A stretch of DNA of 64,000 bases from Ascidiella aspersa (lineage: Eukaryota). This document shows, piece by piece, positions 14,161-38,453 of this stretch. Under the pieces are notes generated by a model. It had not been told where the DNA came from and did no database searches. It was given only the letters and a program-made list of their open reading frames with translations. The DNA is taken from positions 29,512,001 through 29,576,000 of the forward strand of contig OZ004611.1 in assembly GCA_963924565.1 (NCBI GenBank). Reading direction: 5' to 3'. The first letter of the stretch is position 1. Every line of letters starts with the position of its first letter. A program made the position numbers and the translations under genes.

Positions 14161-14260
14161 NNNNNNNNNNNNNNNNNNNNNNNNNNNNNNNNNNNNNNNN
14201 NNNNNNNNNNNNNNNNNNNNNNNNNNNNNNNNNNNNNNNNNNNNNNNNNNNNNNNNNNNN
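14161..14260. other. Assembly gap (100 N, true size unknown)
   Basis: Run of exactly 100 n. Confidence 1.
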
Positions 14261-15423: not shown

Positions 15424-15737
15424 TCGGATCCAATCTGATACTCAAGTGATCATCAGTGCGCCAATATTTGTTAGTTACACATTACGGGTTTATATTTCAA
15501 CTCAAATAAATTTGAAACTAAAACTGTTTATAGACCTAAATAGGCGAACTCCTATACTTCGACAATGCTTAATGGTCAAGTAAACTTTGACTTGAGTCTA
15601 TAAAATGCCGACACAACCAAAATCACTTTTGAAGTACTACAATTCATAATGCTAAAAAATTATATTAGTGTAAACTTACCGATGACGGCATGAGTTTTAA
15701 CGCCGATACCAATTGTCTGCAGAAAACTCTTTTGGGT

Positions 15738-16809: not shown

Positions 16810-16849
<40 letters not shown>

Positions 16850-18002: not shown

Positions 18003-18042
<40 letters not shown>

Positions 18043-19195: not shown

Positions 19196-19235
<40 letters not shown>

Positions 19236-20388
19236 ACTGCCGAAGCAAGTACAATCGTTTACCAACTTTTTTCCTTATCAACGACCTCGTCGAAAAACGC
19301 CGACTCTTTGCGGAGAAGACCCGAATCGCCCAGCCAATTGATTTAGATGTGTCACGATGACGTCGGCAAAATTTCAATAACTCCTGGCCAGAAATCAAAG
19401 GCCAGCTAAAACGAGAGTCCGACTGCCAAATTCTCTTTTCAATTCTTTTCCAATTGTAATTCGTCGTGTCGTTTTGTCGAAAATCGCTTCCAAATGCACT
19501 CTTTTCGAGAGACGGCAAAATACGTTTTCGCTTGCCAAATCTTTCCACGGCCAACCAGCAAGTCTTGGGTAAGGCTGAGAGTTGTACTTCTTCCTGACTG
19601 ACCCCAAACTTTATCGCTTCTCGGCTCTTTAGAGCTAAGATCAAGTGTAGTATCTGTTCTTCTCAGTTTAATACCTGGGACGCAAGCGATTCGCTTGCTC
19701 TTTGTATTAACCTGATTTTTGGACAGGGAGCACGGTGCCGAAGCTTGCTTCGCCCTGCTCACGGGTTGTCCTGGTATTGCAGTACCTCCAGGCACGGCCC
19801 ACATTCCCACACTGTGGGAATTCCTCTTCATCCAATTGAAAATTTGCTTCTTGTTTTGAAAAAAAGAAGCAAAACATAAATCGATTTTTCGAGCGAAAAT
19901 TGAAAAGAAAAATGGTGACCGATCGGCCAAAAATGACAAATTTTGTTCCTACAAGTTGATGCGGGGGGCTTATGGGGTAGCTATCCACAAAGAGTACGGG
20001 CGAGTAGTCGAGTAGGGCCTCGGGAAAAATCGTCACAACTCATACTTACCTGACGGGGGTCTTTAACCGTGATCACGTAGGCGGTTGGCCCAAGGCGAGG
20101 CCTTGCCATTGCACTTCGGCTTGGCTGACCCTTGCGATTACCCCAAATGCGGGTAACTCGGCCGTATAATTTCTGTTAGCGGGGTGTGCGTTCGCGCAAA
20201 ACCCCATACAAACCTTAATCAGTTCTGAAAAAGCTTGGAAACGGCAAGAGCCGGTCGTAGCTGCAAAACGCTGAAAGAGCAGGAGGAAATTTTCGGGGGG
20301 CGTCTTCCGAGTAGCGTCGGCAGAATCGAGTAAAATGTCAAAATAAGGAACGCTTCACGATTTTGCGTGTCATCCTTGCGCAGGGGCC

Positions 20389-20428
<40 letters not shown>

Positions 20429-21581
20429 ACTGCCGAAGCAAGTACAATCGTTTACCAACTTTTTTCCTTATCAACGACCTCGTCGAAAAACGCCGACTCT
20501 TTGCGGAGAAGACCCGAATCGCCCAGCCAATTGATTTAGATGTGTCACGATGACGTCGGCAAAATTTCAATAACTCCTGGCCAGAAATCAAAGGCCAGCT
20601 AAAACGAGAGTCCGACTGCCAAATTCTCTTTTCAATTCTTTTCCAATTGTAATTCGTCGTGTCGTTTTGTCGAAAATCGCTTCCAAATGCACTCTTTTCG
20701 AGAGACGGCAAAATACGTTTTCGCTTGCCAAATCTTTCCACGGCCAACCAGCAAGTCTTGGGTAAGGCTGAGAGTTGTACTTCTTCCTGACTGACCCCAA
20801 ACTTTATCGCTTCTCGGCTCTTTAGAGCTAAGATCAAGTGTAGTATCTGTTCTTCTCAGTTTAATACCTGGGACGCAAGCGATTCGCTTGCTCTTTGTAT
20901 TAACCTGATTTTTGGACAGGGAGCACGGTGCCGAAGCTTGCTTCGCCCTGCTCACGGGTTGTCCTGGTATTGCAGTACCTCCAGGCACGGCCCACATTCC
21001 CACACTGTGGGAATTCCTCTTCATCCAATTGAAAATTTGCTTCTTGTTTTGAAAAAAAGAAGCAAAACATAAATCGATTTTTCGAGCGAAAATTGAAAAG
21101 AAAAATGGTGACCGATCGGCCAAAAATGACAAATTTTGTTCCTACAAGTTGATGCGGGGGGCTTATGGGGTAGCTATCCACAAAGAGTACGGGCGAGTAG
21201 TCGAGTAGGGCCTCGGGAAAAATCGTCACAACTCATACTTACCTGACGGGGGTCTTTAACCGTGATCACGTAGGCGGTTGGCCCAAGGCGAGGCCTTGCC
21301 ATTGCACTTCGGCTTGGCTGACCCTTGCGATTACCCCAAATGCGGGTAACTCGGCCGTATAATTTCTGTTAGCGGGGTGTGCGTTCGCGCAAAACCCCAT
21401 ACAAACCTTAATCAGTTCTGAAAAAGCTTGGAAACGGCAAGAGCCGGTCGTAGCTGCAAAACGCTGAAAGAGCAGGAGGAAATTTTCGGGGGGCGTCTTC
21501 CGAGTAGCGTCGGCAGAATCGAGTAAAATGTCAAAATAAGGAACGCTTCACGATTTTGCGTGTCATCCTTGCGCAGGGGCC

Positions 21582-21621
<40 letters not shown>

Positions 21622-22774
21622 ACTGCCGAAGCAAGTACAATCGTTTACCAACTTTTTTCCTTATCAACGACCTCGTCGAAAAACGCCGACTCTTTGCGGA
21701 GAAGACCCGAATCGCCCAGCCAATTGATTTAGATGTGTCACGATGACGTCGGCAAAATTTCAATAACTCCTGGCCAGAAATCAAAGGCCAGCTAAAACGA
21801 GAGTCCGACTGCCAAATTCTCTTTTCAATTCTTTTCCAATTGTAATTCGTCGTGTCGTTTTGTCGAAAATCGCTTCCAAATGCACTCTTTTCGAGAGACG
21901 GCAAAATACGTTTTCGCTTGCCAAATCTTTCCACGGCCAACCAGCAAGTCTTGGGTAAGGCTGAGAGTTGTACTTCTTCCTGACTGACCCCAAACTTTAT
22001 CGCTTCTCGGCTCTTTAGAGCTAAGATCAAGTGTAGTATCTGTTCTTCTCAGTTTAATACCTGGGACGCAAGCGATTCGCTTGCTCTTTGTATTAACCTG
22101 ATTTTTGGACAGGGAGCACGGTGCCGAAGCTTGCTTCGCCCTGCTCACGGGTTGTCCTGGTATTGCAGTACCTCCAGGCACGGCCCACATTCCCACACTG
22201 TGGGAATTCCTCTTCATCCAATTGAAAATTTGCTTCTTGTTTTGAAAAAAAGAAGCAAAACATAAATCGATTTTTCGAGCGAAAATTGAAAAGAAAAATG
22301 GTGACCGATCGGCCAAAAATGACAAATTTTGTTCCTACAAGTTGATGCGGGGGGCTTATGGGGTAGCTATCCACAAAGAGTACGGGCGAGTAGTCGAGTA
22401 GGGCCTCGGGAAAAATCGTCACAACTCATACTTACCTGACGGGGGTCTTTAACCGTGATCACGTAGGCGGTTGGCCCAAGGCGAGGCCTTGCCATTGCAC
22501 TTCGGCTTGGCTGACCCTTGCGATTACCCCAAATGCGGGTAACTCGGCCGTATAATTTCTGTTAGCGGGGTGTGCGTTCGCGCAAAACCCCATACAAACC
22601 TTAATCAGTTCTGAAAAAGCTTGGAAACGGCAAGAGCCGGTCGTAGCTGCAAAACGCTGAAAGAGCAGGAGGAAATTTTCGGGGGGCGTCTTCCGAGTAG
22701 CGTCGGCAGAATCGAGTAAAATGTCAAAATAAGGAACGCTTCACGATTTTGCGTGTCATCCTTGCGCAGGGGCC

Positions 22775-22814
<40 letters not shown>

Positions 22815-23967
22815 ACTGCCGAAGCAAGTACAATCGTTTACCAACTTTTTTCCTTATCAACGACCTCGTCGAAAAACGCCGACTCTTTGCGGAGAAGACC
22901 CGAATCGCCCAGCCAATTGATTTAGATGTGTCACGATGACGTCGGCAAAATTTCAATAACTCCTGGCCAGAAATCAAAGGCCAGCTAAAACGAGAGTCCG
23001 ACTGCCAAATTCTCTTTTCAATTCTTTTCCAATTGTAATTCGTCGTGTCGTTTTGTCGAAAATCGCTTCCAAATGCACTCTTTTCGAGAGACGGCAAAAT
23101 ACGTTTTCGCTTGCCAAATCTTTCCACGGCCAACCAGCAAGTCTTGGGTAAGGCTGAGAGTTGTACTTCTTCCTGACTGACCCCAAACTTTATCGCTTCT
23201 CGGCTCTTTAGAGCTAAGATCAAGTGTAGTATCTGTTCTTCTCAGTTTAATACCTGGGACGCAAGCGATTCGCTTGCTCTTTGTATTAACCTGATTTTTG
23301 GACAGGGAGCACGGTGCCGAAGCTTGCTTCGCCCTGCTCACGGGTTGTCCTGGTATTGCAGTACCTCCAGGCACGGCCCACATTCCCACACTGTGGGAAT
23401 TCCTCTTCATCCAATTGAAAATTTGCTTCTTGTTTTGAAAAAAAGAAGCAAAACATAAATCGATTTTTCGAGCGAAAATTGAAAAGAAAAATGGTGACCG
23501 ATCGGCCAAAAATGACAAATTTTGTTCCTACAAGTTGATGCGGGGGGCTTATGGGGTAGCTATCCACAAAGAGTACGGGCGAGTAGTCGAGTAGGGCCTC
23601 GGGAAAAATCGTCACAACTCATACTTACCTGACGGGGGTCTTTAACCGTGATCACGTAGGCGGTTGGCCCAAGGCGAGGCCTTGCCATTGCACTTCGGCT
23701 TGGCTGACCCTTGCGATTACCCCAAATGCGGGTAACTCGGCCGTATAATTTCTGTTAGCGGGGTGTGCGTTCGCGCAAAACCCCATACAAACCTTAATCA
23801 GTTCTGAAAAAGCTTGGAAACGGCAAGAGCCGGTCGTAGCTGCAAAACGCTGAAAGAGCAGGAGGAAATTTTCGGGGGGCGTCTTCCGAGTAGCGTCGGC
23901 AGAATCGAGTAAAATGTCAAAATAAGGAACGCTTCACGATTTTGCGTGTCATCCTTGCGCAGGGGCC

Positions 23968-24007
<40 letters not shown>

Positions 24008-24401
24008 ACTGCCGAAGCAAGTACAATCGTTTACCAACTTTTTTCCTTATCAACGACCTCGTCGAAAAACGCCGACTCTTTGCGGAGAAGACCCGAATCG
24101 CCCAGCCAATTGATTTAGATGTGTCACGATGACGTCGGCAAAATTTCAATAACTCCTGGCCAGAAATCAAAGGCCAGCTAAAACGAGAGTCCGACTGCCA
24201 AATTCTCTTTTCAATTCTTTTCCAATTGTAATTCGTCGTGTCGTTTTGTCGAAAATCGCTTCCAAATGCACTCTTTTCGAGAGACGGCAAAATACGTTTT
24301 CGCTTGCCAAATCTTTCCACGGCCAACCAGCAAGTCTTGGGTAAGGCTGAGAGTTGTACTTCTTCCTGACTGACCCCAAACTTTATCGCTTCTCGGCTCT
24401 T
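15738..24401. repeat. 1193-bp U2-U1-U6 array, block 2 (7 intact copies of each gene)
   Basis: Exact match to unit starts at unit position 955 (agacccgaatcg); U2 starts at 16034+1193k; ends in U2 nt 1-17 at 24385-24401. Confidence 0.98.
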
Positions 24402-24573
24402 CAGAGACCTAACATTGGTGGTATACGAGCCTCATCCACGAGTTAACTTTGCAACTTCAATCGGGAAGGCAAAGAGTGAGCCCCTTCAGCTGGCCAAGTT
24501 CCTCGTAAACAGATTATACTTGTTAGGCGAGTTCCCCCGGTTGTCGTGTGGTATCGTAGTCACGTTCCTCGAC

Positions 24574-24760
24574 TTGGAGCCCGACGACTCTCTTTTGAGA
24601 GCGTGAGGCACAGATACTGGTTTGGAGCCCGACGACTCTCTGTTGAGAGCGTGAGGCGTAGATACTGGTTGGAAGCCCGACGACTCTCTGTTGAGAGCGT
24701 GAGGCCTAGTTTTTACTGGTTGGGAGCTCGACGACTATCTGTTGATAGCGTGAGGCACAG
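24574..24760 (+). repeat. 4 x 48-51 bp hairpin repeat in element 5' UTR (copy 2: about 38626-38812)
   Basis: GCCCGACGACTCTCTKTTGAGAGCGTGAGGC-type core recurring at about 24579, 24627, 24675, 24726. Confidence 0.9.
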
Positions 24761-24872
24761 TTTTCGTCCCCCGGTTTTCAGCGGCTCCTACGCGGCCATC
24801 CGCGCGCTCCGCCCCGGGCCTCTTCAGCAGCGGAGCTCCCGGCATTTTTTTGCCGCAGCCCTCACCCGCACT

Positions 24873-25455
24873 CCACCGGAGGTCCCTGCAGTTGCCGGTG
24901 TGCCATCCGGTGTTTGCTGCCCAGCTCTTGGCCTCACCCCACCGGAGGTCCCTGCAACGTTGGCCAGCTCTTCGGCCCTCTACCTCCAGTGTTCGCCGAC
25001 CCCCACCGGAGGTCCCTGCAGTTGCCGGTGTGCCATCCTGTGGTTGCTGCCCAGCTCTTGGCCTCACCCCACCGGAGGTCCCTGCAACGTTGGCCAGCTC
25101 TTCGGCCCTCTACCTCCAGTGTTCGCCGACCCCCACCGGAGGTCCCTGCAGTTGCCGGTCTGCCCTCTAGTGTCCACTGGTCGGCTCTCCACTGTACCCC
25201 ACCGGAGGTCCCTACAACTTCGGCAACTTTGTGGTGCTCTACCACCAGCGTCCAGCTACCCCCACCGGAGGTCCCTGCAACCTTGGACAGCCCAGCGGTC
25301 CTCTAACACCTGCACTCCGCCTCCACCACCGGAGGTCCCTGCACCTGCCCGCTGCTCTTAAGCCTTCACAACCGGAGGCTGTCGCAGCCGCCGGTCTGCC
25401 GTTTGTGCACCAGTTCCCGACCTTCACAACCGGAGGCTCTCGCAGCCGCCGGTCT
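24873..25455 (+). repeat. About 65-bp GC-rich repeat (10 ACCGGAGG cores, alternating 66/64-bp dimer) in element 5' UTR (copy 2: about 38925-39510)
   Basis: ACCGGAGG at 24875, 24941, 25005, 25071, 25135, 25201, 25264, 25328, 25371, 25429. Confidence 0.9.
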
Positions 25456-26059
25456 GTCGTAAGTTGCTGTACCCGCTGAAACCAGCCACCATCTCAACTG
25501 CGCCTCTCCCCACTCCATCTGCTCCCAACCAGCCTCACCGTCTCACCATCCGCTTCCAACCCATCCGCCTCAAAACCAGTTCTACCATCTGTTCCAAACC
25601 AGCCTGCTCATCCATCTGCCTCACCGCCTCACCATCTGCTCCAATCGCGACAACACCACCGAACGTGACTACGATCCACATCCATCTTCACCACACGACA
25701 ACCCACCACCACCTACGAAGAACTTGGCCCATCACCACCAGCAGCCCTTCACCCCTAACTCGCGGATTACACTCTGGATTAATACCATCAAAACACAAAG
25801 GATTATTCCACCTTTCATCGCTCTCAATCATCGCCGGATCCGACACCCTTCCCCCCCTGGTTGGCCCACATCGCCGGTCTCCTTCTAAACAAGTATTTTA
25901 GCATAACCTTCTATCCTTTTTGGCCGAGAAGCACCTAACTTTAATTTAATTTATCATACTCCCCCTCGGTTATATCTTTTAATACCCTCCCCCCCCTGCA
26001 ACTCAAGCAATTTTAATAAGGACTCGCGCCGGCTCTAAATTGTGCTTCCTCGGTCCCTC

Positions 26060-26573
26060 TACCAGTTTTATATCTTACCTTTTTATTATTACATTACATA
26101 CATTTTACTACTACATATTATTACATACGTCTCGCTCTTTTACAATTTTACTGTGCCACGACTACTCGCAGACTTATATTTTACCTTTTTATTATCACAT
26201 ATTATTACATAAATTTTACTATTACATATTATTACACATTATTACATACGTCTCGCTCTTTTACAATTTTACTGTGCCACGACTACTCGCAGACTTATAT
26301 TTTACCTTTTTATTATTACATATTATTACAAACATTTTATTATTACATATTACTACATATTATTACATACATTATATTATTACATATTATTACACATTAT
26401 TACATACGTCTCGCCCTTCTACAATTTTACTGTGCCACGACTACTCGCAGACTTATATTTTACCTTTTTATTATCACATATTATTACATACATTTTACTA
26501 TTACATACTATTACACATTATTACATACGTCTCGCTCTTTTACAATTTTACTGTGCCACGACTATTCGCAGAC
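26060..26573 (+). repeat. AT-rich compound repeat: (TATTACAYAT)n blocks alternating with 4 copies of a ~46-bp core ending TCGCAGACT (copy 2: about 40115-40627)
   Basis: Core CGTCTCGCTCTTTTACAATTTTACTGTGCCACGACTACTCGCAGACT near 26128, 26249, 26407, 26528. Confidence 0.9.
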
Positions 26574-26593
26574 TGTACACCGGTCCCAACGTC

Positions 26594-29500
26594 ATGAACG
26601 TTCAACCACCGCGTCGCAGGCTTCGCCCAGCAGTTCGTTCACGCGCGGATCAGGGGACGGCATCATCCAAACCAACCAAAGATGCCCCATCGCAGGAGGA
26701 AGCCCCACCCTTGTCGGTAACGTTTAGGGGGCCCGGGGATTCCGTGTTTCGGTGCGGGGTTAGTGGCTGTTCTATGGTCTCGGCAGCGCTCCAATCAGTC
26801 AAGCGCCATTTGGCATCTGTACATGGCTTGGCTGTTGGAGTGCTGGACGCGGCCTGTGGGAAGTGTTCCGCTTCCTTCAGGTCGCGTGGCTCCCTCATTA
26901 ACGTGAGGGACCATTACCGTGCCTGTGGAGCAGTCGCCCCCGCCGCTGCACCGCGGACTCCTCGGGCCTTTTGCTGCCCAGTCTGCGATAGTCGCTGGCC
27001 GTCTCTCGTAGCTGCCAAGTCCCACCATTACCAAAAGCACCCGGGCGGGCCGTCACGCAATAACAACAGCTTTGTGGTGGCCCCCGGTCTGTTATCACCT
27101 CGGCGTAGCATTAAACAACGCCCCTTTACTCTGAACGTGCGCTACGTCGACGCGGCTACCACCTATAAATGCCCCGTGCCGGCTTGCCCGAAAGGTAATG
27201 ACGGATACGCTAGAGTCCGAACATTAAAAACCCACCTCAGTACTTGTCACAAAATTAATAACGTCTTACTTAGGGTAGTATGTGGCAAGTGCGAGTGCGT
27301 CGTCGCCGACAAGGCTATGTCCTTATTGCCCGCCTCTTCGCACTTTAAATCATGTTCTGGCTCTGGCAAACCCCCGAGCATCCCGGTGCCCATACTCCCA
27401 CCCTCGCCCGCGAACCACTCTGTTGGGGAGGACTCTGATAGTTCTACAGTTGGCAAGGTCCCTTCGCTGATCTTCTATCAGTCGAAGGCTTCGATAAATA
27501 CCACCCCGCCCTCGGACAGTGAGTTTTTGTATGGCCACGTCTCTCCCCCAAGTGGGAGTTCTCACTGTTCTTCAGTAACGCTAATTTCCCCCATCGCTAC
27601 GGTTGCGCCGGTGTTGTCGTACGCCGATGCAGTCCGTACGCCATCTCCAAAGCTGTCACAGATAGATCTAGTTACCCCACCAAACCTACCAACCGTGGGC
27701 ATTCAGAATTCCTTTTCGGCAGAGTGCGTCGACCCTTACCAGCCTTCCGAGGTTTCGAGCGTCATCAACGCGACCTCACCATCTGGTCCCCCTTCGTTCA
27801 CGCTCCTTAGGAGCTGGCTAAACACTCCTTGCACCGGGAGTACCAGGCGCGTTCCGGTAGAGATCCCGCAGATCTCTCCTTCTCGCCTCGCTCGACTGGC
27901 AGTTACAATTAGGGATCACTATCGTTCAAGGGTTAACGTCGCCACGGGGGTCTCGCCTGATCCGAAGCCACCGAAAGCGAGCGTGTTTCTCTCTGGAGAA
28001 ACACCTGGCCGCGAAGTGGTGAAAGTGAAGGAGGGGCCGCCAGTTCAAGGAGGGTGGACGGATCGTCCGACACAGCAACTTCTTGTGTCGAACCTTCTTT
28101 CTGCCGGAGAACTGGACCAGGCTACATCACCTCCCGAGGTGGTGGAGCCGTGCGTTGCCGAGGCTACCGTTGCGGGAGCGGGGGAGGTGTCGGCGGCAGG
28201 GAACTGCCCGTCGCCTGAACCCGTTCCGGGCGCGCCAGAGCGACCGGCCGTGAAGACCAGGTGTGAATGGGAGGCCTTGTTGCCGAGCAGTCCGCCTGTG
28301 TCCGATCAGGTCCCAGTACCCGTGGTTGGAGACGTGTCCCACCGAAGTCCTGTTGCAAGCTCTGAAAATGCGTCAAGCTCATTGCCTGTTAGATGTAACG
28401 TTAACGACCCACCTTTAACCGACCCCAGTAATGACGACTTGAGAGCTCGCCTTGCGCATGTAATTGACGCCCATTCTTCCCCCGATAGTTTCGGCGAGCT
28501 CGAGCACGCATTAGAGGAGTGGACCAAACTCGCTGGCTCTGTAGACATTACGCGTAAGCAGCGCAAGCCTCGATACAACCGCGGTGCTCAGCACCGTGCG
28601 ACCACCAACCGCGAGCGCGGCCACCCCAACAAGACAACCATACCAATAAAGGGGGCGGCCGCCAAAGGGCAGTGCTTGCGCTCAGCGTTCTGGCGAGACC
28701 AGCGAGCTACGGTTCGCCGCATCACGGACGGGTTAAAAGGGGAGGTCAAATGTGGGATAGCTCCTCGAGTCATCGAGGAGAAGTTTCGCGCCGACCTTAA
28801 GGCACCGGGGGCGTACGAGCATCTCGAGCCGGTACCAAGCTGGATGCGAGCCACGACGGGAGGGGGAGATGCGTCATCGGGGGCTTCTGGCGGTGTGGAC
28901 TCTGCTCCAATATCTCCGCGCGAGGTGGAGATGGTTCTCCAGTCCGTTAACACTGCTTCGGCGGCAGGATCTGACGGGTTGTCCTATGGCTTTTGGAAGG
29001 CTCTAGATCCCAAGGGCATCGTCCTTGCGGAGCTTTTCGAGAGGTGTAGGATCGCTCGTCGGATTCCCGCGCAGTGGCGTAAGTCGAAAGTCACTCTGAT
29101 CTGCAAGGATCCGGGCGGCGACCTCGACGACGTCTCGAACTGGAGACCCATTTCCATCTGTCGCAACTTGTACAAGTTGTACGCGGCGGTGTTGGCGCGG
29201 CGTTTGCAGCGCTGGGCGCTCGACGGTGGCGTTATTTCTCCTGAACAGAAGGGTTTCATGCCAGTGGAAGGAACGTTCGAGCATGTTTTCGTGTTGGACT
29301 CAGCCTGGGTAGATGCACGACAGGCGAAGAAGGACATCTTCGTCGCCTGGCTCGACGTCAAGAACGCCTTCGGCAGTATCCGTCACGATTGTATTCGTAG
29401 CATAATGGACGAGCTTCAGGTTCCTGACTACTTGATTGAGTGCGTTGCTGATATCTACGTTGGTAACACGTGTGTCGTTCGCACGGCGGGTGGTGTTACC

Positions 29501-31309
29501 AACGAGATACCAGTAGGGCGAGGGGTACGCCAAGGCTGCCCCTTGTCCGGCCTCGTATTCAATCTGGTGGCCGAGGTTCTTGTTAGAGGGGTCAAAGCTC
29601 GCGCCGGTTGCGGATACAGATTCGATTGCGCTCCTAATGTCTTTTCCCAAGTGCTGGCATACGCTGACGACGGGTGTCTCATCTCGAGCTCGAGGTCACA
29701 GATGTGCGAGCAGCTGAAAGTGTGTGAGGAGTTCGCCGGCTGGGCAGGTATCCGTTTTAACCCGAAAAAATGCCGCATAATGAACCAGGTGCTGGTTGGA
29801 AGTCGCCGACAACGGGATCCGCAGCCTTTCTCGCTCTCGGGCGAGGAGGTCAAGGTGATTGGTCTGGGCGAATTCTACCGCTACTTGGGAGTGCGGCAGG
29901 GATACCTTCCTGACACTCGATCGAACACCACCCTCGAGTTGTCTGCCGAGCGAATCAAGCGACTCTTTGAGTCGCCCCTCACGCCACACCAGAAGCTGCT
30001 GGCACTGAAGCGATTCGAGCTCCCCCGTCTGAGCTTCATCTTGAGGTTGCGGCATTTTCCGGTAAAGGAGTTGAGGAAGGTGGACTCTACGGTGCGGCGT
30101 TGCGTGCGCATTTCACTCCGCCTCCCAACACGAACGTGCGTGGCTTTTTACCACACGTCAGCAGACAGCGGAGGCCTGGGGATCCCGTCGATTGCCGCCG
30201 AGGGCGACATACTGGCGGTGACACAGGCCTTCAAAATGCTGACAGCACCGGACTGGCGGGTGCGCGCCGTGGCCGTGGGTCGACTCGAATCTCTCTCGAA
30301 ACGGATGGCCAAAGCTGAAAGTGTCGATGCCGGTGCGATGGCAGCTTTCATATCAGGGGGCAACGTCAGTGGTAACGGGTGCGGAGCGGGCGGAAGTCTG
30401 GAACGAGACTTGTTTACGTTTGTACGCAAGGCCTCGGAAAGGATCGATGTTCAATTCGTCGCGGGCGCTGACGGGCAGTTTTCTGTGACGTCTGGTGACA
30501 AGACGTTATCCCCCAGCAACCGGGCAGTATTTACCAGGACCCTCCACGCCTTACAATCAAAGCGTTGGAGGGAAGTGTGGGCCAGTCATCCAGACCAAGG
30601 TAAGACCGTAGGGGCCCACACCCAATACGGTTATTCGAACCACTGGTTGAAGAACCCCGGGGCTCTGACTATTCCAGAGCGCATTTTCGCGATGAAAGCA
30701 CGCCTCAACCTCCTTCCTGTCAAGAAGGTTCGGGAACGATTTCACGGGGGACAGTCAGACGTTAGGTGCTGCAGATGCGGCAGTTCGGCCGAGACACTTC
30801 CCCACGTACTCAACCACTGTGTTCCCGTCATGCCCCAAATCCTATCTCGGCACGACGCCATACAGGGGGAAGTGTTGCGCCACGTACCTTCAGGGACCTT
30901 CACCAAGGTTTCTTGTGACCGAGTTTGCCGGGAGCACGCCGATGCCACGGGTGAGAACCTCCGGCCAGACTTGATTGTCGAGAGCGCCGACAGGTTCTTA
31001 GTCGTGGACTTTGCGTGCCCTTTCGAAAACGGCCAAGTTGCCCTTACCGCTGCTGCGGCCCGTAAGCACCAAAAGTACAGGGAGTTGTGTGGAAACTTGG
31101 CCCGTGTTTCCAAGAAGCGAGTCCTTTTCCACACCTTCATCATCGGCTCCCTGGGCAGCTATGCTCAAGGCAACAATTCCACCCTCAGCGCCTTGGGCAT
31201 CACGGGCCGTCGTATGACGGAGGTAGCCAGAGCATGCTCAGCTCTGGCTATCAAGGGTAGCCACCACGTGTGGCAATCTTGGTGCAGGGGGATTGTTACC
31301 AAACCTTAA
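26594..31309 (+). CDS. Retrotransposon polyprotein: N-terminal zinc fingers, reverse transcriptase, CCHC knuckle, restriction-like endonuclease (1571 aa from first ATG)
   Basis: SAAGSDGL, NWRPISI, QKGF, WLDVKNAFGSI, GVRQGCPLS, LAYADD; CRCGSSAETLPHVLNHC; RHD; RPDLIV..VVDFACPFE..KHQKY. The track start at 26432 is a GTG inside the AT-rich repeat; first ATG is 26594. Confidence 0.95.
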   Translation: MNVQPPRRRLRPAVRSRADQGTASSKPTKDAPSQEEAPPLSVTFRGPGDSVFRCGVSGCSMVSAALQSVKRHLASVHGLAVGVLDAACGKCSASFRSRGSLINVRDHYRACGAVAPAAAPRTPRAFCCPVCDSRWPSLVAAKSHHYQKHPGGPSRNNNSFVVAPGLLSPRRSIKQRPFTLNVRYVDAATTYKCPVPACPKGNDGYARVRTLKTHLSTCHKINNVLLRVVCGKCECVVADKAMSLLPASSHFKSCSGSGKPPSIPVPILPPSPANHSVGEDSDSSTVGKVPSLIFYQSKASINTTPPSDSEFLYGHVSPPSGSSHCSSVTLISPIATVAPVLSYADAVRTPSPKLSQIDLVTPPNLPTVGIQNSFSAECVDPYQPSEVSSVINATSPSGPPSFTLLRSWLNTPCTGSTRRVPVEIPQISPSRLARLAVTIRDHYRSRVNVATGVSPDPKPPKASVFLSGETPGREVVKVKEGPPVQGGWTDRPTQQLLVSNLLSAGELDQATSPPEVVEPCVAEATVAGAGEVSAAGNCPSPEPVPGAPERPAVKTRCEWEALLPSSPPVSDQVPVPVVGDVSHRSPVASSENASSSLPVRCNVNDPPLTDPSNDDLRARLAHVIDAHSSPDSFGELEHALEEWTKLAGSVDITRKQRKPRYNRGAQHRATTNRERGHPNKTTIPIKGAAAKGQCLRSAFWRDQRATVRRITDGLKGEVKCGIAPRVIEEKFRADLKAPGAYEHLEPVPSWMRATTGGGDASSGASGGVDSAPISPREVEMVLQSVNTASAAGSDGLSYGFWKALDPKGIVLAELFERCRIARRIPAQWRKSKVTLICKDPGGDLDDVSNWRPISICRNLYKLYAAVLARRLQRWALDGGVISPEQKGFMPVEGTFEHVFVLDSAWVDARQAKKDIFVAWLDVKNAFGSIRHDCIRSIMDELQVPDYLIECVADIYVGNTCVVRTAGGVTNEIPVGRGVRQGCPLSGLVFNLVAEVLVRGVKARAGCGYRFDCAPNVFSQVLAYADDGCLISSSRSQMCEQLKVCEEFAGWAGIRFNPKKCRIMNQVLVGSRRQRDPQPFSLSGEEVKVIGLGEFYRYLGVRQGYLPDTRSNTTLELSAERIKRLFESPLTPHQKLLALKRFELPRLSFILRLRHFPVKELRKVDSTVRRCVRISLRLPTRTCVAFYHTSADSGGLGIPSIAAEGDILAVTQAFKMLTAPDWRVRAVAVGRLESLSKRMAKAESVDAGAMAAFISGGNVSGNGCGAGGSLERDLFTFVRKASERIDVQFVAGADGQFSVTSGDKTLSPSNRAVFTRTLHALQSKRWREVWASHPDQGKTVGAHTQYGYSNHWLKNPGALTIPERIFAMKARLNLLPVKKVRERFHGGQSDVRCCRCGSSAETLPHVLNHCVPVMPQILSRHDAIQGEVLRHVPSGTFTKVSCDRVCREHADATGENLRPDLIVESADRFLVVDFACPFENGQVALTAAAARKHQKYRELCGNLARVSKKRVLFHTFIIGSLGSYAQGNNSTLSALGITGRRMTEVARACSALAIKGSHHVWQSWCRGIVTKP

Positions 31310-32511
31310 ACCATCCTTTGCAAGCGCAGACTGGCACCACACAAACACAAACCGGACGATCACGGCGGCGGGGCATCAACTTAACCGCAAATAAACCAGC
31401 TCACCAGTACGTTCATCAATCAGCCAACAACCCAGCCCACTCACCACCCCATCACCTCGGAAAACTTCAGCCCTTTGACCCCAGCTCTATCCACGCCCCG
31501 CCGCCAACCCCTCCTCGCACTCCAATGTTAAAGCTGGCCTCCTCCAATCAAAACCCACTCCTGATAGTTTCGCCGAGGTGCTCCCAACTCTTCAACCGCG
31601 CGGCAGCCGGGGACCAACTCTCCAAACACTTTAACGTTCCAACGTTCGTCTATCGTCCCCGGCCAACACCTTCAACAGTTCCGCCCGCCACACCAGTCGA
31701 ATCATCGTCAACGGCAAAAGGGCGGATGCCGCGCGGTCAACACCTCACCTCTTCACACCAATGGGGCCGGCTAGGAAGCCTGCCCCCGAACTGTCTGGCA
31801 CCAACACTGGAGCACCTCGGCCCCCCAACCAACACGGAGGCCAGCAGGCCGGCGCACGTCGCCGACCCACTAATTCGCACCATCCCCACCCGGTTTGCAC
31901 AACACTTAGCTTTTAAATCTTTTTTTTTGTCTTAGGTAGCTCGTTTTTAACCGCTTTACCGCCCCAAAATTGCACTTACTAGCAATTAAAGCACTTACCG
32001 CACTTAAACCTCTTTCAAGTTTTAAATGCACCCCCCCTTTTTTTATATATATGCAAAGTTCCGAACTATTTTTTATATTTACATTGTTTTTAAATATTTT
32101 TATACCCACACCCCGTGTACTTTTTTCGCCACCCTCACCCCTTTCCACTCACTAGGCACACTTCCAAAATATGTATCTAAATTACACAATACCATACCCG
32201 AGCCCAGTCTGCGCCAGTCCCTCTGTTCCTCCTGCGACGTCTCCTGCAAGCCCTACCATCGGCGGGCCCCACAATTCACTTAGCTTATAACTTAACTAAT
32301 CTGGCCCTAACTTTTTTAAATTTACCTTTTTTTTCCACAGTAATCATCAAATCTTAACCAAACCAAACCCACAAATTCTATCACCCATCGCCGTTACGGC
32401 GGTGGAGGCCGAGCGTGCAACGCACAATACTTATTGCCGGCGAAGCCTGTTTATATTGTCGTTTTCGTGTTTTATCGCCGTCAACACAATAAACCGGTGT
32501 ACAGTCAAAAG

Positions 32512-32661
32512 TCTGTTCTTCTCAGTTTAATACCTGGGACGCAAGCGATTCGCTTGCTCTTTGTATTAACCTGATTTTTGGACAGGGAGCACGGTGCCGA
32601 AGCTTGCTTCGCCCTGCTCACGGGTTGTCCTGGTATTGCAGTACCTCCAGGCACGGCCCAC
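32512..32661 (+). pseudogene. U2: 3' remnant (nt 41 to end) of U2 disrupted by element copy 1
   Basis: U2 resumes at TCTGTTCTTCTCAG directly after element end GTCAAAAG. Confidence 0.93.
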
Positions 32662-33247
32662 ATTCCCACACTGTGGGAATTCCTCTTCATCCAATTGAAA
32701 ATTTGCTTCTTGTTTTGAAAAAAAGAAGCAAAACATAAATCGATTTTTCGAGCGAAAATTGAAAAGAAAAATGGTGACCGATCGGCCAAAAATGACAAAT
32801 TTTGTTCCTACAAGTTGATGCGGGGGGCTTATGGGGTAGCTATCCACAAAGAGTACGGGCGAGTAGTCGAGTAGGGCCTCGGGAAAAATCGTCACAACTC
32901 ATACTTACCTGACGGGGGTCTTTAACCGTGATCACGTAGGCGGTTGGCCCAAGGCGAGGCCTTGCCATTGCACTTCGGCTTGGCTGACCCTTGCGATTAC
33001 CCCAAATGCGGGTAACTCGGCCGTATAATTTCTGTTAGCGGGGTGTGCGTTCGCGCAAAACCCCATACAAACCTTAATCAGTTCTGAAAAAGCTTGGAAA
33101 CGGCAAGAGCCGGTCGTAGCTGCAAAACGCTGAAAGAGCAGGAGGAAATTTTCGGGGGGCGTCTTCCGAGTAGCGTCGGCAGAATCGAGTAAAATGTCAA
33201 AATAAGGAACGCTTCACGATTTTGCGTGTCATCCTTGCGCAGGGGCC

Positions 33248-33287
<40 letters not shown>

Positions 33288-34440
33288 ACTGCCGAAGCAA
33301 GTACAATCGTTTACCAACTTTTTTCCTTATCAACGACCTCGTCGAAAAACGCCGACTCTTTGCGGAGAAGACCCGAATCGCCCAGCCAATTGATTTAGAT
33401 GTGTCACGATGACGTCGGCAAAATTTCAATAACTCCTGGCCAGAAATCAAAGGCCAGCTAAAACGAGAGTCCGACTGCCAAATTCTCTTTTCAATTCTTT
33501 TCCAATTGTAATTCGTCGTGTCGTTTTGTCGAAAATCGCTTCCAAATGCACTCTTTTCGAGAGACGGCAAAATACGTTTTCGCTTGCCAAATCTTTCCAC
33601 GGCCAACCAGCAAGTCTTGGGTAAGGCTGAGAGTTGTACTTCTTCCTGACTGACCCCAAACTTTATCGCTTCTCGGCTCTTTAGAGCTAAGATCAAGTGT
33701 AGTATCTGTTCTTCTCAGTTTAATACCTGGGACGCAAGCGATTCGCTTGCTCTTTGTATTAACCTGATTTTTGGACAGGGAGCACGGTGCCGAAGCTTGC
33801 TTCGCCCTGCTCACGGGTTGTCCTGGTATTGCAGTACCTCCAGGCACGGCCCACATTCCCACACTGTGGGAATTCCTCTTCATCCAATTGAAAATTTGCT
33901 TCTTGTTTTGAAAAAAAGAAGCAAAACATAAATCGATTTTTCGAGCGAAAATTGAAAAGAAAAATGGTGACCGATCGGCCAAAAATGACAAATTTTGTTC
34001 CTACAAGTTGATGCGGGGGGCTTATGGGGTAGCTATCCACAAAGAGTACGGGCGAGTAGTCGAGTAGGGCCTCGGGAAAAATCGTCACAACTCATACTTA
34101 CCTGACGGGGGTCTTTAACCGTGATCACGTAGGCGGTTGGCCCAAGGCGAGGCCTTGCCATTGCACTTCGGCTTGGCTGACCCTTGCGATTACCCCAAAT
34201 GCGGGTAACTCGGCCGTATAATTTCTGTTAGCGGGGTGTGCGTTCGCGCAAAACCCCATACAAACCTTAATCAGTTCTGAAAAAGCTTGGAAACGGCAAG
34301 AGCCGGTCGTAGCTGCAAAACGCTGAAAGAGCAGGAGGAAATTTTCGGGGGGCGTCTTCCGAGTAGCGTCGGCAGAATCGAGTAAAATGTCAAAATAAGG
34401 AACGCTTCACGATTTTGCGTGTCATCCTTGCGCAGGGGCC

Positions 34441-34480
<40 letters not shown>

Positions 34481-35633
34481 ACTGCCGAAGCAAGTACAAT
34501 CGTTTACCAACTTTTTTCCTTATCAACGACCTCGTCGAAAAACGCCGACTCTTTGCGGAGAAGACCCGAATCGCCCAGCCAATTGATTTAGATGTGTCAC
34601 GATGACGTCGGCAAAATTTCAATAACTCCTGGCCAGAAATCAAAGGCCAGCTAAAACGAGAGTCCGACTGCCAAATTCTCTTTTCAATTCTTTTCCAATT
34701 GTAATTCGTCGTGTCGTTTTGTCGAAAATCGCTTCCAAATGCACTCTTTTCGAGAGACGGCAAAATACGTTTTCGCTTGCCAAATCTTTCCACGGCCAAC
34801 CAGCAAGTCTTGGGTAAGGCTGAGAGTTGTACTTCTTCCTGACTGACCCCAAACTTTATCGCTTCTCGGCTCTTTAGAGCTAAGATCAAGTGTAGTATCT
34901 GTTCTTCTCAGTTTAATACCTGGGACGCAAGCGATTCGCTTGCTCTTTGTATTAACCTGATTTTTGGACAGGGAGCACGGTGCCGAAGCTTGCTTCGCCC
35001 TGCTCACGGGTTGTCCTGGTATTGCAGTACCTCCAGGCACGGCCCACATTCCCACACTGTGGGAATTCCTCTTCATCCAATTGAAAATTTGCTTCTTGTT
35101 TTGAAAAAAAGAAGCAAAACATAAATCGATTTTTCGAGCGAAAATTGAAAAGAAAAATGGTGACCGATCGGCCAAAAATGACAAATTTTGTTCCTACAAG
35201 TTGATGCGGGGGGCTTATGGGGTAGCTATCCACAAAGAGTACGGGCGAGTAGTCGAGTAGGGCCTCGGGAAAAATCGTCACAACTCATACTTACCTGACG
35301 GGGGTCTTTAACCGTGATCACGTAGGCGGTTGGCCCAAGGCGAGGCCTTGCCATTGCACTTCGGCTTGGCTGACCCTTGCGATTACCCCAAATGCGGGTA
35401 ACTCGGCCGTATAATTTCTGTTAGCGGGGTGTGCGTTCGCGCAAAACCCCATACAAACCTTAATCAGTTCTGAAAAAGCTTGGAAACGGCAAGAGCCGGT
35501 CGTAGCTGCAAAACGCTGAAAGAGCAGGAGGAAATTTTCGGGGGGCGTCTTCCGAGTAGCGTCGGCAGAATCGAGTAAAATGTCAAAATAAGGAACGCTT
35601 CACGATTTTGCGTGTCATCCTTGCGCAGGGGCC

Positions 35634-35673
<40 letters not shown>

Positions 35674-36826
35674 ACTGCCGAAGCAAGTACAATCGTTTAC
35701 CAACTTTTTTCCTTATCAACGACCTCGTCGAAAAACGCCGACTCTTTGCGGAGAAGACCCGAATCGCCCAGCCAATTGATTTAGATGTGTCACGATGACG
35801 TCGGCAAAATTTCAATAACTCCTGGCCAGAAATCAAAGGCCAGCTAAAACGAGAGTCCGACTGCCAAATTCTCTTTTCAATTCTTTTCCAATTGTAATTC
35901 GTCGTGTCGTTTTGTCGAAAATCGCTTCCAAATGCACTCTTTTCGAGAGACGGCAAAATACGTTTTCGCTTGCCAAATCTTTCCACGGCCAACCAGCAAG
36001 TCTTGGGTAAGGCTGAGAGTTGTACTTCTTCCTGACTGACCCCAAACTTTATCGCTTCTCGGCTCTTTAGAGCTAAGATCAAGTGTAGTATCTGTTCTTC
36101 TCAGTTTAATACCTGGGACGCAAGCGATTCGCTTGCTCTTTGTATTAACCTGATTTTTGGACAGGGAGCACGGTGCCGAAGCTTGCTTCGCCCTGCTCAC
36201 GGGTTGTCCTGGTATTGCAGTACCTCCAGGCACGGCCCACATTCCCACACTGTGGGAATTCCTCTTCATCCAATTGAAAATTTGCTTCTTGTTTTGAAAA
36301 AAAGAAGCAAAACATAAATCGATTTTTCGAGCGAAAATTGAAAAGAAAAATGGTGACCGATCGGCCAAAAATGACAAATTTTGTTCCTACAAGTTGATGC
36401 GGGGGGCTTATGGGGTAGCTATCCACAAAGAGTACGGGCGAGTAGTCGAGTAGGGCCTCGGGAAAAATCGTCACAACTCATACTTACCTGACGGGGGTCT
36501 TTAACCGTGATCACGTAGGCGGTTGGCCCAAGGCGAGGCCTTGCCATTGCACTTCGGCTTGGCTGACCCTTGCGATTACCCCAAATGCGGGTAACTCGGC
36601 CGTATAATTTCTGTTAGCGGGGTGTGCGTTCGCGCAAAACCCCATACAAACCTTAATCAGTTCTGAAAAAGCTTGGAAACGGCAAGAGCCGGTCGTAGCT
36701 GCAAAACGCTGAAAGAGCAGGAGGAAATTTTCGGGGGGCGTCTTCCGAGTAGCGTCGGCAGAATCGAGTAAAATGTCAAAATAAGGAACGCTTCACGATT
36801 TTGCGTGTCATCCTTGCGCAGGGGCC

Positions 36827-36866
<40 letters not shown>

Positions 36867-38019
36867 ACTGCCGAAGCAAGTACAATCGTTTACCAACTTT
36901 TTTCTTTATCAACGACCTCGTCGAAAAACGCCGACTCTTTGCGGAGAAGACCCGAATCGCCCAGCCAATTGATTTAGATGTGTCACGATGACGTCGGCAA
37001 AATTTCAATAACTCCTGGCCAGAAATCAAAGGCCAGCTAAAACGAGAGTCCGACTGCCAAATTCTCTTTTCAATTCTTTTCCAATTGTAATTCGTCGTGT
37101 CGTTTTGTCGAAAATCGCTTCCAAATGCACTCTTTTCGAGAGACGGCAAAATACGTTTTCGCTTGCCAAATCTTTCCACGGCCAACCAGCAAGTCTTGGG
37201 TAAGGCTGAGAGTTGTACTTCTTCCTGACTGACCCCAAACTTTATCGCTTCTCGGCTCTTTAGAGCTAAGATCAAGTGTAGTATCTGTTCTTCTCAGTTT
37301 AATACCTGGGACGCAAGCGATTCGCTTGCTCTTTGTATTAACCTGATTTTTGGACAGGGAGCACGGTGCCGAAGCTTGCTTCGCCCTGCTCACGGGTTGT
37401 CCTGGTATTGCAGTACCTCCAGGCACGGCCCACATTCCCACACTGTGGGAATTCCTCTTCATCCAATTGAAAATTTGCTTCTTGTTTTGAAAAAAAGAAG
37501 CAAAACATAAATCGATTTTTCGAGCGAAAATTGAAAAGAAAAATGGTGACCGATCGGCCAAAAATGACAAATTTTGTTCCTACAAGTTGATGCGGGGGGC
37601 TTATGGGGTAGCTATCCACAAAGAGTACGGGCGAGTAGTCGAGTAGGGCCTCGGGAAAAATCGTCACAACTCATACTTACCTGACGGGGGTCTTTAACCG
37701 TGATCACGTAGGCGGTTGGCCCAAGGCGAGGCCTTGCCATTGCACTTCGGCTTGGCTGACCCTTGCGATTACCCCAAATGCGGGTAACTCGGCCGTATAA
37801 TTTCTGTTAGCGGGGTGTGCGTTCGCGCAAAACCCCATACAAACCTTAATCAGTTCTGAAAAAGCTTGGAAACGGCAAGAGCCGGTCGTAGCTGCAAAAC
37901 GCTGAAAGAGCAGGAGGAAATTTTCGGGGGGCGTCTTCCGAGTAGCGTCGGCAGAATCGAGTAAAATGTCAAAATAAGGAACGCTTCACGATTTTGCGTG
38001 TCATCCTTGCGCAGGGGCC

Positions 38020-38059
<40 letters not shown>

Positions 38060-38453
38060 ACTGCCGAAGCAAGTACAATCGTTTACCAACTTTTTTCCTT
38101 ATCAACGACCTCGTCGAAAAACGCCGACTCTTTGCGGAGAAGACCCGAATCGCCCAGCCAATTGATTTAGATGTGTCACGATGACGTCGGCAAAATTTCA
38201 ATAACTCCTGGCCAGAAATCAAAGGCCAGCTAAAACGAGAGTCCGACTGCCAAATTCTCTTTTCAATTCTTTTCCAATTGTAATTCGTCGTGTCGTTTTG
38301 TCGAAAATCGCTTCCAAATGCACTCTTTTCGAGAGACGGCAAAATACGTTTTCGCTTGCCAAATCTTTCCACGGCCAACCAGCAAGTCTTGGGTAAGGCT
38401 GAGAGTTGTACTTCTTCCTGACTGACCCCAAACTTTATCGCTTCTCGGCTCTT
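32512..38453. repeat. 1193-bp U2-U1-U6 array, block 3 (4 intact U2, 5 U1, 5 U6)
   Basis: U2 starts at 33665, 34858, 36051, 37244; interrupted U2 at 38437. Confidence 0.98.

What the first reader, a model, noticed from the sequence alone, without database searches (positions are those of the whole stretch)
24385..32520. Apparently active site-specific retrotransposon inserting exactly after the U2 branch-point recognition motif
Seen: three insertions share a 3' junction at U2 nt 41 (GTAGTA^TCTGTTCTT), same orientation as U2, no TSD, only a 4-5 nt A tail, two intact 1571-aa ORFs; 3 of about 37 U2 sites are occupied. Established: RLE-type U2-targeting elements are the Utopia family, and APE-type Keno elements use the same region. 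The family is therefore known. This member, with a 2.2-kb structured 5' UTR and a 1.2-kb 3' UTR in a U1/U2/U6 co-array, may be new. The target core is conserved in human U2, so it is a candidate gene-insertion enzyme analogous to R2.
Basis: partly seen in the sequence, partly recalled or inferred. Interest (0 to 1): 0.8.

Follow-up and report, generated by a model that had tools for sequence, protein, structure and literature searches.

The report
U2-gene-specific Utopia retrotransposon, recently active
This is a young, intact member of the known Utopia family of jumping genes, which insert at one exact spot in the U2 spliceosomal RNA gene; each full copy also begins with a mutated copy of the U2 gene's first 22 bases.

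Summary
The window is a 1193-bp U2-U1-U6 tandem array. It carries two full-length 8.1-kb insertions and one 5'-truncated insertion of one element. Two more full-length copies lie just downstream of the window.

All nine 3' ends of this family in the genome (five young, four old) abut U2 at nt 40/41, in the form ...CAGTC(A)nG|TCTGTTCTT. This is the published Utopia site.

The single 1571-aa ORF has five N-terminal zinc fingers, an RT with YADD, a CCHC finger and an intact restriction-like endonuclease (RLE). It has no APE and no Myb domain. It groups with U2-flanked oomycete and scorpion Utopia proteins. Its nearest named relative, from the ascidian Clavelina, is only 47-49% identical.

Activity is supported by:
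- four intact ORFs that differ by 0.1-0.3%;
- dN/dS of 0.11 against an older lineage;
- four extra 5' junctions in independent DNA reads that the assembly lacks.

No RNA was seen in the one RNA-seq run sampled.

New details:
- Full-length copies start with a U2 nt 1-22 copy bearing T18C. This copy moves with the element, which suggests transcription from the U2 start.
- Truncated copies keep genuine U2 up to nt 35-38, which fits an R2-like staggered cut.

The "structured UTR" claim is not supported. Verdict: a new member of a known kind.

The parts
1..64000 (+). Tandem array of 1193-bp units, each U2(+), U1(+), U6(-). The array runs beyond both window ends (about -5906 to +84531 in window coordinates).
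   Evidence: Rfam hits. Unit BLAST shows units 99.8-100% identical.
24385..32511 (+). Full-length element copy 1 (8127 bp, counted from the U2-like first base to the terminal G).
24385..24406 (+). U2-derived 5' end of the element: U2 nt 1-22 with T18C. It is the same in all 4 full-length young copies and in 2 old copies.
   Evidence: The read joint 24406>24390 shows genuine U2 nt 1-35 followed by this leader again.
24407..26593 (+). Rest of the 5' UTR. It holds tandem-repeat blocks at 24574-24768 (48 nt x4), 24866-25349 (130 nt x3-4) and 26063-26574 (121/158 nt). There is no ATG ORF of 80 aa or more and no known ribozyme.
26594..31309 (+). Single ORF of 1571 aa, intact in all four full-length copies.
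26753..27355 (+). Five zinc-finger-like motifs in the order C2H2, CCHC, C2H2, C2H2, CCHC (aa 54-254). The module is shared with the Clavelina and marine-metagenome relatives.
29132..29839 (+). Reverse transcriptase domain (Pfam RVT_1, E = 6e-31), with YADD at 29660-29671.
30767..30820 (+). C-terminal CCHC zinc finger (CCRCGSSAETLPHVLNHC).
30962..31078 (+). Restriction-like (PD-D/ExK) endonuclease core: RPD, VVDFACPFE, KHQKY.
   Evidence: Alignment with Utopia-type proteins and with solved R2 proteins.
31310..32511 (+). 3' UTR (1202 nt). A block at 32380-32453 and the terminus at 32488-32511 (AATAAACCGGTGTACAGTCAAAAG) are conserved in the old lineages.
32512..32666 (+). Downstream half of the interrupted U2 gene (nt 41-195).
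38437..46559 (+). Full-length copy 2, 99.4% identical to copy 1, with the same junctions.
60098..63171 (+). 5'-truncated copy 3 (element positions 5052 to the end). Its 5' end is joined to U1 nt 27 of the preceding unit, with 777 bp of array lost. Its tail reads AAAAA.

Best explanation
This is a site-specific non-LTR retrotransposon of the Utopia group (NeSL clade, RLE type). It lives in the U2 snRNA genes of this animal's single U2-U1-U6 array.

Most likely mechanism:
- The ORF protein recognises the conserved U2 branch-point-binding region through its N-terminal zinc fingers (inferred).
- Its RLE nicks the antisense strand between U2 nt 40 and 41 (inferred from the junctions).
- The protein reverse-transcribes the element RNA from that nick. 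The RNA ends in (A)nG and probably runs on into U2 nt 41 onwards (target-primed reverse transcription, inferred by homology with R2).
- The sense strand is cut a few bases upstream, near nt 38, so about 2-5 bp of U2 are lost and no duplication forms (inferred from junctions in reads).
- The element RNA begins with a copy of U2 nt 1-22 (T18C). Transcription therefore most likely starts at the U2 +1 of an occupied gene, driven by the U2 promoter.
- Full-length cDNA can be healed by pairing with U2 nt 1-17 of the target. This would explain the identical full-length 5' junctions (inferred).

The family has been active recently.
For: Family and enzyme:
- RVT_1 is the only Pfam domain, with no APE and no Myb.
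- CCHC and RPD/D..E/K motifs are conserved with Utopia-type proteins.
- Solved R2 proteins match across both RT and RLE (E = 1e-63).
- In the tree the protein sits with U2-flanked Phytophthora and Centruroides proteins, separated from R2-like rows by a long branch with 100% support.

Specificity:
- Five young and four old 3' ends are all joined to U2 nt 41.
- No young 3' end lies elsewhere in 308 Mb.

Activity:
- Four intact ORFs; 37 variable sites in 8.1 kb.
- dN/dS = 0.11 (dS 0.85) against the chromosome 1 lineage.
- DNA reads of run X16 show genuine U2 up to nt 36-38 joined to element positions 25197, 25731 and 28497. None of these is in the assembly.

Leader:
- The same T18C leader is present in 4 young copies and in the 80%-identical old copy at L017:6957.
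- The old copy in L019 starts at leader nt 13 with no U2 nt 1-12 in front of it.
- X16 reads show genuine U2 nt 1-35, then GT, then the leader from about nt 6.

Co-transcript:
- The nearest relative (P0001, 49% identical) is held in a contig that carries SMART-type cDNA adapter sequences at both ends. It reads ...AAAAAAG|TCTGTTCTTTTCAG..., running into U2.
Against: - No expression: 1 partial read among 7.8 million RNA-seq reads (6% of run X17). That library may be poly(A)-selected, which would miss snRNA-promoter transcripts.
- The extra junctions rest on only 3-4 reads each. They may lie in the unassembled part of the same array rather than in another individual, so polymorphism between individuals is not shown.
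- The four full-length copies have identical junctions. They could have multiplied by unequal crossing-over rather than by transposition.
- Beyond nt 22 the resemblance of the 5' end to U2 is weak.
- snRNA promoters are not known to drive 8-kb transcripts.
- Cleavage positions are read from junctions, not measured.
Confidence: 0.85

Rival explanations
1. The element is a dead passenger. One old insertion was multiplied by unequal crossing-over and homogenisation of the snRNA array, as happens to R2 in rDNA. The intact ORFs would then reflect only the youth of the duplications.
For: - Array units are 99.8-100% identical, so homogenisation is strong.
- The four full-length copies have identical 5' and 3' junctions, and two of them are neighbours.
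- No RNA was seen.
- Six of 13 ORF differences are synonymous, which is only a weak excess.
Against: - There are at least five other distinct 5' junctions: copy 3 in U1, and four joints in X16 reads.
- The tail of copy 3 differs.
- dN/dS of 0.11 between lineages shows long selection for function.
- The same site is used on other chromosomes.
Confidence: 0.12
2. The U2-like 5' end is not part of the element RNA. It is simply the target's own U2 nt 1-22, mutated once (T18C). The sense strand would then be cut near nt 17-22, deleting U2 nt 18/23-40, and transcription would start from an internal promoter in the repeat-rich 5' UTR.
For: - Utopia 5' boundaries vary, and in oomycetes include target deletions (PMC4640811).
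- Similarity to U2 beyond nt 22 is not significant.
- Long repeat-rich 5' UTRs often carry internal promoters (general knowledge).
Against: - C18 is shared by a lineage only 80% identical.
- All 34 intact U2 genes in the window have T18.
- The L019 copy carries leader nt 13-22 next to non-U2 DNA.
- X16 reads place the leader after genuine U2 nt 1-35.
- Truncated copies keep U2 up to nt 36-38, so the sense-strand break is near nt 38, not nt 17-22.
Confidence: 0.25
3. It is an APE-type U2-specific element (Keno) or an R2 relative that changed target.
For: Keno uses the same 3' junction (PMC4640811). R2 proteins are the best solved-structure matches.
Against: - There is no APE domain, while RLE motifs are present.
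- There is no Myb domain.
- The tree separates it from R2-like rows by a branch of length 1.7 with 100% support.
Confidence: 0.02

Closest known systems
Utopia (U2 snRNA gene-specific RLE non-LTR retrotransposons, NeSL clade; Kojima and Jurka 2015, PMC4640811)
   Same: - Same 3' junction in front of TCTGTTCTT.
- Same orientation as U2.
- Single ORF with N-terminal zinc fingers, RT, C-terminal zinc finger and RLE.
- No target-site duplication, as in arthropod families.
- Strict specificity and low copy number, as in Phytophthora and Nasonia.
- More than one lineage in one genome.
   Different: - Only about 30-33% identical to the oomycete and arthropod proteins found here.
- Five N-terminal fingers rather than one to three.
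- No RNase H and no protease.
- 2.2-kb repeat-rich 5' UTR and 1.2-kb 3' UTR.
- Begins with a heritable U2 nt 1-22 copy (T18C). I found no mention of a promoter in that paper.
- The host belongs to a group not in the paper's host table, judging by its nearest relatives.
Unnamed Clavelina lepadiformis (ascidian) and marine-metagenome RLE elements (P0001-P0006); possibly the YURE lineage of Ciona
   Same: - Closest proteins (42-49% identical), forming one clade with 99% support.
- Same five-finger module.
- Similar length of about 8 kb with long UTRs.
- All are next to U2.
- P0001's element has the same (A)nG|TCTGTTCTT junction.
   Different: - The Clavelina element (P0003), the P0006 element and probably the P0005 (TARA) element sit about 20 nt further along U2. 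The 5' flank runs to nt 56-62 and the 3' flank starts near CTGGGACGC.
R2 (28S rDNA-specific RLE element)
   Same: - Homologous RT and RLE (E = 1e-63 to solved R2 proteins).
- Multicopy RNA gene target.
- Short A-rich 3' end.
- Apparent sense-strand cut a few bp upstream of the antisense nick, with a small deletion.
- Likely co-transcription with the host gene, and host-gene sequence at the 5' end that could heal the junction.
   Different: - Different target.
- No Myb domain.
- No HDV-like ribozyme detected.
- The host promoter would be a Pol II snRNA promoter rather than Pol I.
SLACS/CZAR/CRE and NeSL-1 (spliced-leader gene-specific RLE elements)
   Same: RLE elements that sit in a small Pol II-transcribed RNA gene. 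From my own recall, not tested here: these are reported to be transcribed from the +1 of the interrupted gene.
   Different: Different target gene and host groups. NeSL-1 has a Ulp1 protease, which is absent here.
Keno (APE-type, U2-specific, R1 clade)
   Same: Same 3' flanking U2 sequence (PMC4640811).
   Different: Keno has an AP-endonuclease. This element has an RLE and no APE.

Membership tests
Utopia | Insertion in U2 snRNA genes with the 3' flank starting at TCTGTTCT | tested here: met
   Nine of 9 3' ends (5 young, 4 old) meet this; none lies elsewhere. The site matches the text of PMC4640811.
Utopia | C-terminal restriction-like (PD-D/ExK) endonuclease preceded by a CCHC finger; no APE | tested here: met
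   The motifs align with Phytophthora proteins and with solved R2 proteins. No APE was found in Pfam.
Utopia | Single ORF with N-terminal zinc fingers and a central RT | tested here: met
   There is one ATG ORF with RVT_1. It has five finger motifs, more than the one to three described.
Utopia | RT phylogeny inside the Utopia/NeSL lineage | tested here: inconclusive
   It groups with U2-flanked oomycete and scorpion proteins and a Ulp1-bearing NeSL-like protein, apart from R2-like rows (100% SH-aLRT, quick tree). However, its 7-row clade is sister to all of these, and no Repbase reference sequences were available.
Utopia | No Myb domain (criterion used by Hassan et al. 2026, PMC13188248) | tested here: met
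   No Myb match even at E up to 5. Structure was not predicted.
YURE (Ciona) | RT clusters with YURECi / YURE_CSa | not testable with these tools
   No YURE sequence could be obtained. Only the ascidian origin of the nearest named relatives hints at a link.
R2 | Insertion in 28S rDNA, a Myb domain, and a 5' HDV-like ribozyme | tested here: not met
   The target is U2. There is no Myb and no ribozyme hit in Rfam at E up to 5.
Keno | AP-endonuclease domain at the N-terminus | tested here: not met
NeSL-1 | Spliced-leader gene target and a Ulp1 protease | tested here: not met
   The target is U2, and no PF02902 match was found.

The most novel reading that the evidence does not exclude
This Utopia lineage hitch-hikes on the U2 snRNA promoter.
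- Its RNA starts at U2 +1 and carries a heritable, mutated copy of the U2 5' end.
- That copy both marks the transcript start and lets full-length cDNA re-join the target by homology.
- Cleavage is staggered by about 2 bp, as in R2.

Its close relatives have moved to a second U2 site about 20 nt downstream while keeping the same five-finger module. The clade would therefore be a natural series for learning how zinc-finger changes retarget an R2-like enzyme within a sequence that the published literature describes as conserved across eukaryotes.
Probability: 0.5. Interest if true: 0.55.

Novelty: new member of a known kind. Interest (0 to 1): 0.42.

Why it matters
Utopia is known, so the family is not a discovery. 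What this locus offers is an unusually clean, young case:
- four intact copies;
- every junction readable;
- a strictly single target in a 308-Mb genome;
- independent truncated insertions visible in reads.

This makes three things testable that the 2015 description left open:
- where the two strands are cut;
- how the 5' end is joined;
- where transcription starts.

Because R2-type enzymes are being developed for site-specific gene insertion, a second well-defined enzyme-target pair could be of practical interest. Its target is described in the literature as highly conserved across eukaryotes. Its close relatives use a shifted site with the same finger module. All of this still needs biochemistry.

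Tried and rejected
- **Ribozyme or other known RNA in the element.** A permissive Rfam search of 24300-32600 gave only the U2 remnant and a chance snoRNA hit.
- **Structured UTRs.** Folding energies are no better than shuffles. RNAalifold on four 3' ends gave one small hairpin with a single compensatory pair and a covariation term of -0.19, which is too weak to claim.
- **Hidden ORF1.** The 925-aa upstream ORF of the TARA relative has no match in the 5' UTR. The bacterial-code ORFs at 24546-25361 and 31270-31935 have no Pfam hit and no ATG, or only a short ATG ORF.
- **APE and Myb domains.** Both absent.
- **U2 resemblance of the 5' end beyond nt 22.** Not significant.
- **The 6.3-kb sequence after the last array unit (L017:526-6846) and the 1.5-kb stretch beside the assembly gap.** Neither is related to the element at DNA or protein level.
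- **RNA evidence.** None in X17.
- **Earlier notes of the scan.** Nothing on Utopia; one note on copy 3.
- **Host identity.** Not determined. I ran no further search on it.


Full report
**Setting**

The window is G000:C5:29512001-29576000 of a 308.6-Mb animal assembly. Rfam finds 34 complete U2, 35 U1 and 35 U6 genes, plus three U2 genes that score low because their first 40 nt are replaced.

The genes form a 1193-bp unit of U2(+), U1(+) and U6(-). Units are 99.8-100% identical. The array runs from about 5.9 kb before the window to about 20.5 kb after it.

**The insertions**

BLAST of 24385-32520 against the extended array finds five copies:
- four full-length copies, at window 24385, 38437, 66711 and 75974;
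- one copy truncated at element position 5052, at window 60098.

The full-length copies are 99.3-99.8% identical to copy 1, and the truncated copy 99.8%. They differ at 37 substitution columns and a few repeat-length indels.

All five end ...AACCGGTGTACAGTCAAAA(G/A) and are followed by TCTGTTCTTCTCAG, which is U2 from nt 41.

**Specificity across the genome**

- A 25-nt probe for the element's 3' end finds only these five places.
- The intact target (24 nt spanning the site) occurs 41 times, all in this array. There is also an odd inverted pair of partial U2 copies at C5:16.78 Mb.
- The U2 nt 41-70 probe finds 53 places.

The extra places include degenerate element copies on C1 (L018) and C4 (L028) and at two further places on C5 (L019, L020). 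Each has an element 3' end of the form CCGGTGT(A/G)CAG(T/C)C(A)nG directly in front of U2 nt 41. So 9 of 9 readable 3' ends use the same site.

Internal fragments on C2 (L022) and C5 (L021) have no ends and say nothing either way.

**The protein**

The only ATG ORFs of 80 aa or more on the + strand are 26594-31309 (1571 aa) and two short ones in the 3' UTR.

- Pfam finds only RVT_1. Permissive scans add weak C2H2 hits, with no Myb and no APE.
- Five finger motifs lie at aa 54-254, in the order C2H2, CCHC, C2H2, C2H2, CCHC. The same module is present in the Clavelina, TARA and ENA relatives.
- YADD, the C-terminal CCHC finger and the RPD / VVD..E / KxxKY nuclease motifs align with Phytophthora, arthropod and NeSL-like proteins.
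- Solved R2 proteins match over both RT and RLE (E = 1e-63).

**Relatives**

The word-based protein search found these matches:
- an unnamed Logan protein at 49% identity;
- two Clavelina lepadiformis proteins at 47-48%;
- marine-metagenome proteins at 42-43%;
- arthropod proteins at 31-33%;
- Phytophthora and Peronospora proteins with RNase H at 28-30%.

In a quick maximum-likelihood tree the element sits in a 7-row clade (99% support) with the first three groups. That clade is sister (93%) to oomycete, arthropod and Ulp1-bearing rows. All 38 are split from R2-like rows by a branch with 100% support.

I checked the flanks of the reference rows.
- Phytophthora ramorum copies are followed by TCTGTTCTAATCAG, and a Centruroides copy by TCTGTTCTTATCAG. 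These rows are therefore Utopia by the published criterion (PMC4640811).
- The nearest relative (P0001) lies in a contig with SMART-type cDNA adapter sequences at both ends. It ends ...AAAAAAG|TCTGTTCTTTTCAGATTAATACC. This is the same (A)nG junction, seen in RNA-derived sequence that reads into U2.
- The Clavelina element P0003 and the P0006 element are different. Their 5' flank is U2 nt 1-56 and their 3' flank starts near CTGGGACGC (about nt 60). The TARA element's U2-like 5' part runs to about nt 62.

The clade therefore uses two sites in U2. This element keeps the canonical one.

**The 5' end**

All four full-length copies read ATCGCTTCTCGGCTCTT-C-AGAG-ACCTAACATTGGTGGTATACGAG. Genuine U2 has T at nt 18 and continues CTAAGATCAAGTGTAGTA. 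All 34 intact U2 genes in the window have T18. Past nt 22 the likeness to U2 is weak (p = 0.09 against shuffles and 0.014 against random element 27-mers).

Three observations indicate that nt 1-22 with C18 belong to the element and not to the target:
1. An old copy only 80% identical (L017:6957) has the same C18 leader.
2. Another old copy (L019) starts at leader nt 13 directly after non-U2 DNA.
3. DNA reads of run X16 contain genuine U2 nt 1-35, then GT, then the leader again from about nt 6 (3 reads).

The simplest reading is that the element RNA begins at or near U2 +1 of an occupied gene. Full-length cDNA would then usually be joined by pairing with U2 nt 1-17 of the new target. I found no mention of a promoter or of transcription of the element in the Utopia paper or in other papers of the library.

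**Reads**

Run X16 is Illumina WGS with the same species label; about 1% of it was read. It gives these depths:

| Region | Depth |
|---|---|
| Array spacer next to U2 | about 1100 |
| Element ORF | about 30 |
| Element 5' UTR | about 19 |

With 1936 million letters read over 308.6 Mb (about 6.3-fold), that suggests about 175 units and about 5 ORF-bearing copies. The assembly, which has a 100-N gap inside the array, probably under-represents the array. Occupancy is then nearer 3%.

Three joints link genuine U2 ending at nt 36-38 to element positions 25197, 25731 (with 14 extra letters) and 28497, with 3-4 reads each. None is in the assembly.
- They show further independent 5'-truncated insertions at the same site.
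- They place the sense-strand break 2-5 nt upstream of the antisense nick.

They may lie in unassembled units of the same individual, so I do not claim polymorphism between individuals.

RNA-seq run X17 (6% read, 7.8 million reads) gave one partial read. No expression is shown.

Near-identical element sequence is also held by runs under three other organism codes and by several marine metagenomes.

**Selection**

Against the C1 lineage, 312 RT codons give dS = 0.85, dN = 0.094 and dN/dS = 0.11. Among the young copies, 13 ORF sites vary (6 synonymous). Substitution density is 0.28% in the ORF and 0.9% in the 5' UTR.

The U2 fragment next to the C1 copy is 99.3% identical to present U2. The two lineages therefore diverged while both were active, rather than after insertion.

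**UTRs**

The 5' UTR is built of three tandem-repeat blocks. Neither it nor the 3' UTR folds better than shuffles. No known ribozyme is present. A 74-nt block and the last 24 nt of the 3' UTR are conserved between lineages, but structural support is weak.

**Copy 3**

Its 5' end is joined to U1 nt 27 of the preceding unit (AACC|TTGAGTG), with loss of 777 bp.

**Verdict**

This is a real, strictly U2-specific, very probably still mobile Utopia element. It is new as a member: 49% identity to the nearest protein, a five-finger module and long UTRs. It is not new as a kind.

The U2-derived leader and the staggered-cut reading are the parts worth an experiment. The proposed tests concern an ordinary retrotransposon enzyme.

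Noticed in passing
window 14161-15725: A 100-N assembly gap is followed by 1465 bp of unique, AT-rich sequence. It interrupts one array unit (unit position 980 before it, 884 after it). It is unrelated to the element. It may be a mis-join or another insertion.
   Followed up: partly
L017:500-530 (C5:29596500) and window 60097: The last unit of the array breaks off at U1 nt 27/28 and continues into 6.3 kb of unrelated sequence. Truncated copy 3 is joined to the array at the same U1 position. I have no explanation for two breaks at one U1 position.
   Followed up: partly
window 24268, 24273, 24346, 24360: In DNA reads and contigs of three other runs, most array units carry other letters at these four spacer positions (for example 682 of 722 reads). 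Unit depth implies about 175 units against 46 assembled. The assembled unit type is a minority there.
   Followed up: no
L027 (C1:2302118, minus strand): A U2 retropseudogene with a poly(A) tail. Its U2 nt 29-40 are replaced by about 72 nt of foreign sequence ending ...GAGCCTTTAA|TCTGTTC. This is the same site but a different tail, so it may be a second U2-targeting family, and an occupied U2 gene that was transcribed and retro-copied.
   Followed up: no
L028 (C4:32861506): About 200-300 nt of an old element 3' UTR, followed by U2 nt 41-69 and then an A-run. This may be a retro-copied piece of an element-U2 co-transcript.
   Followed up: no
L023 (C5:16783000): Two partial U2 copies (nt 1-97) in inverted orientation, with GTGGAGTA in place of GTGTAGTA at the target.
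   Followed up: no
L024:3230-3290 and L025:2880-2930 (Clavelina lepadiformis): U2 genes interrupted at nt 32/33 by something that ends in a long poly(A) run (A(n)GTGTAGTA|TCTG). This is a second, poly(A)-type U2-targeting insertion in the same arrays as the RLE elements.
   Followed up: no
L025:3677-11840, L032:8100-8258, L026:132-200: The closest relatives insert about 20 nt further along U2. Their 5' flank runs to nt 56-62 and their 3' flank starts near CTGGGACGC. The Utopia paper does not describe this site.
   Followed up: partly
L026:223-3000 (TARA metagenome contig): This relative has a called 925-aa ORF upstream of its RT ORF, starting just after the U2-like leader. It has no Pfam hit and no match in this element, so it may be spurious.
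   Followed up: partly
window 1-64000: U2, U1 and U6 are linked in one 1193-bp repeat, with U6 on the opposite strand. By pattern search, all intact U2 genes of the assembly lie in this single array.
   Followed up: partly
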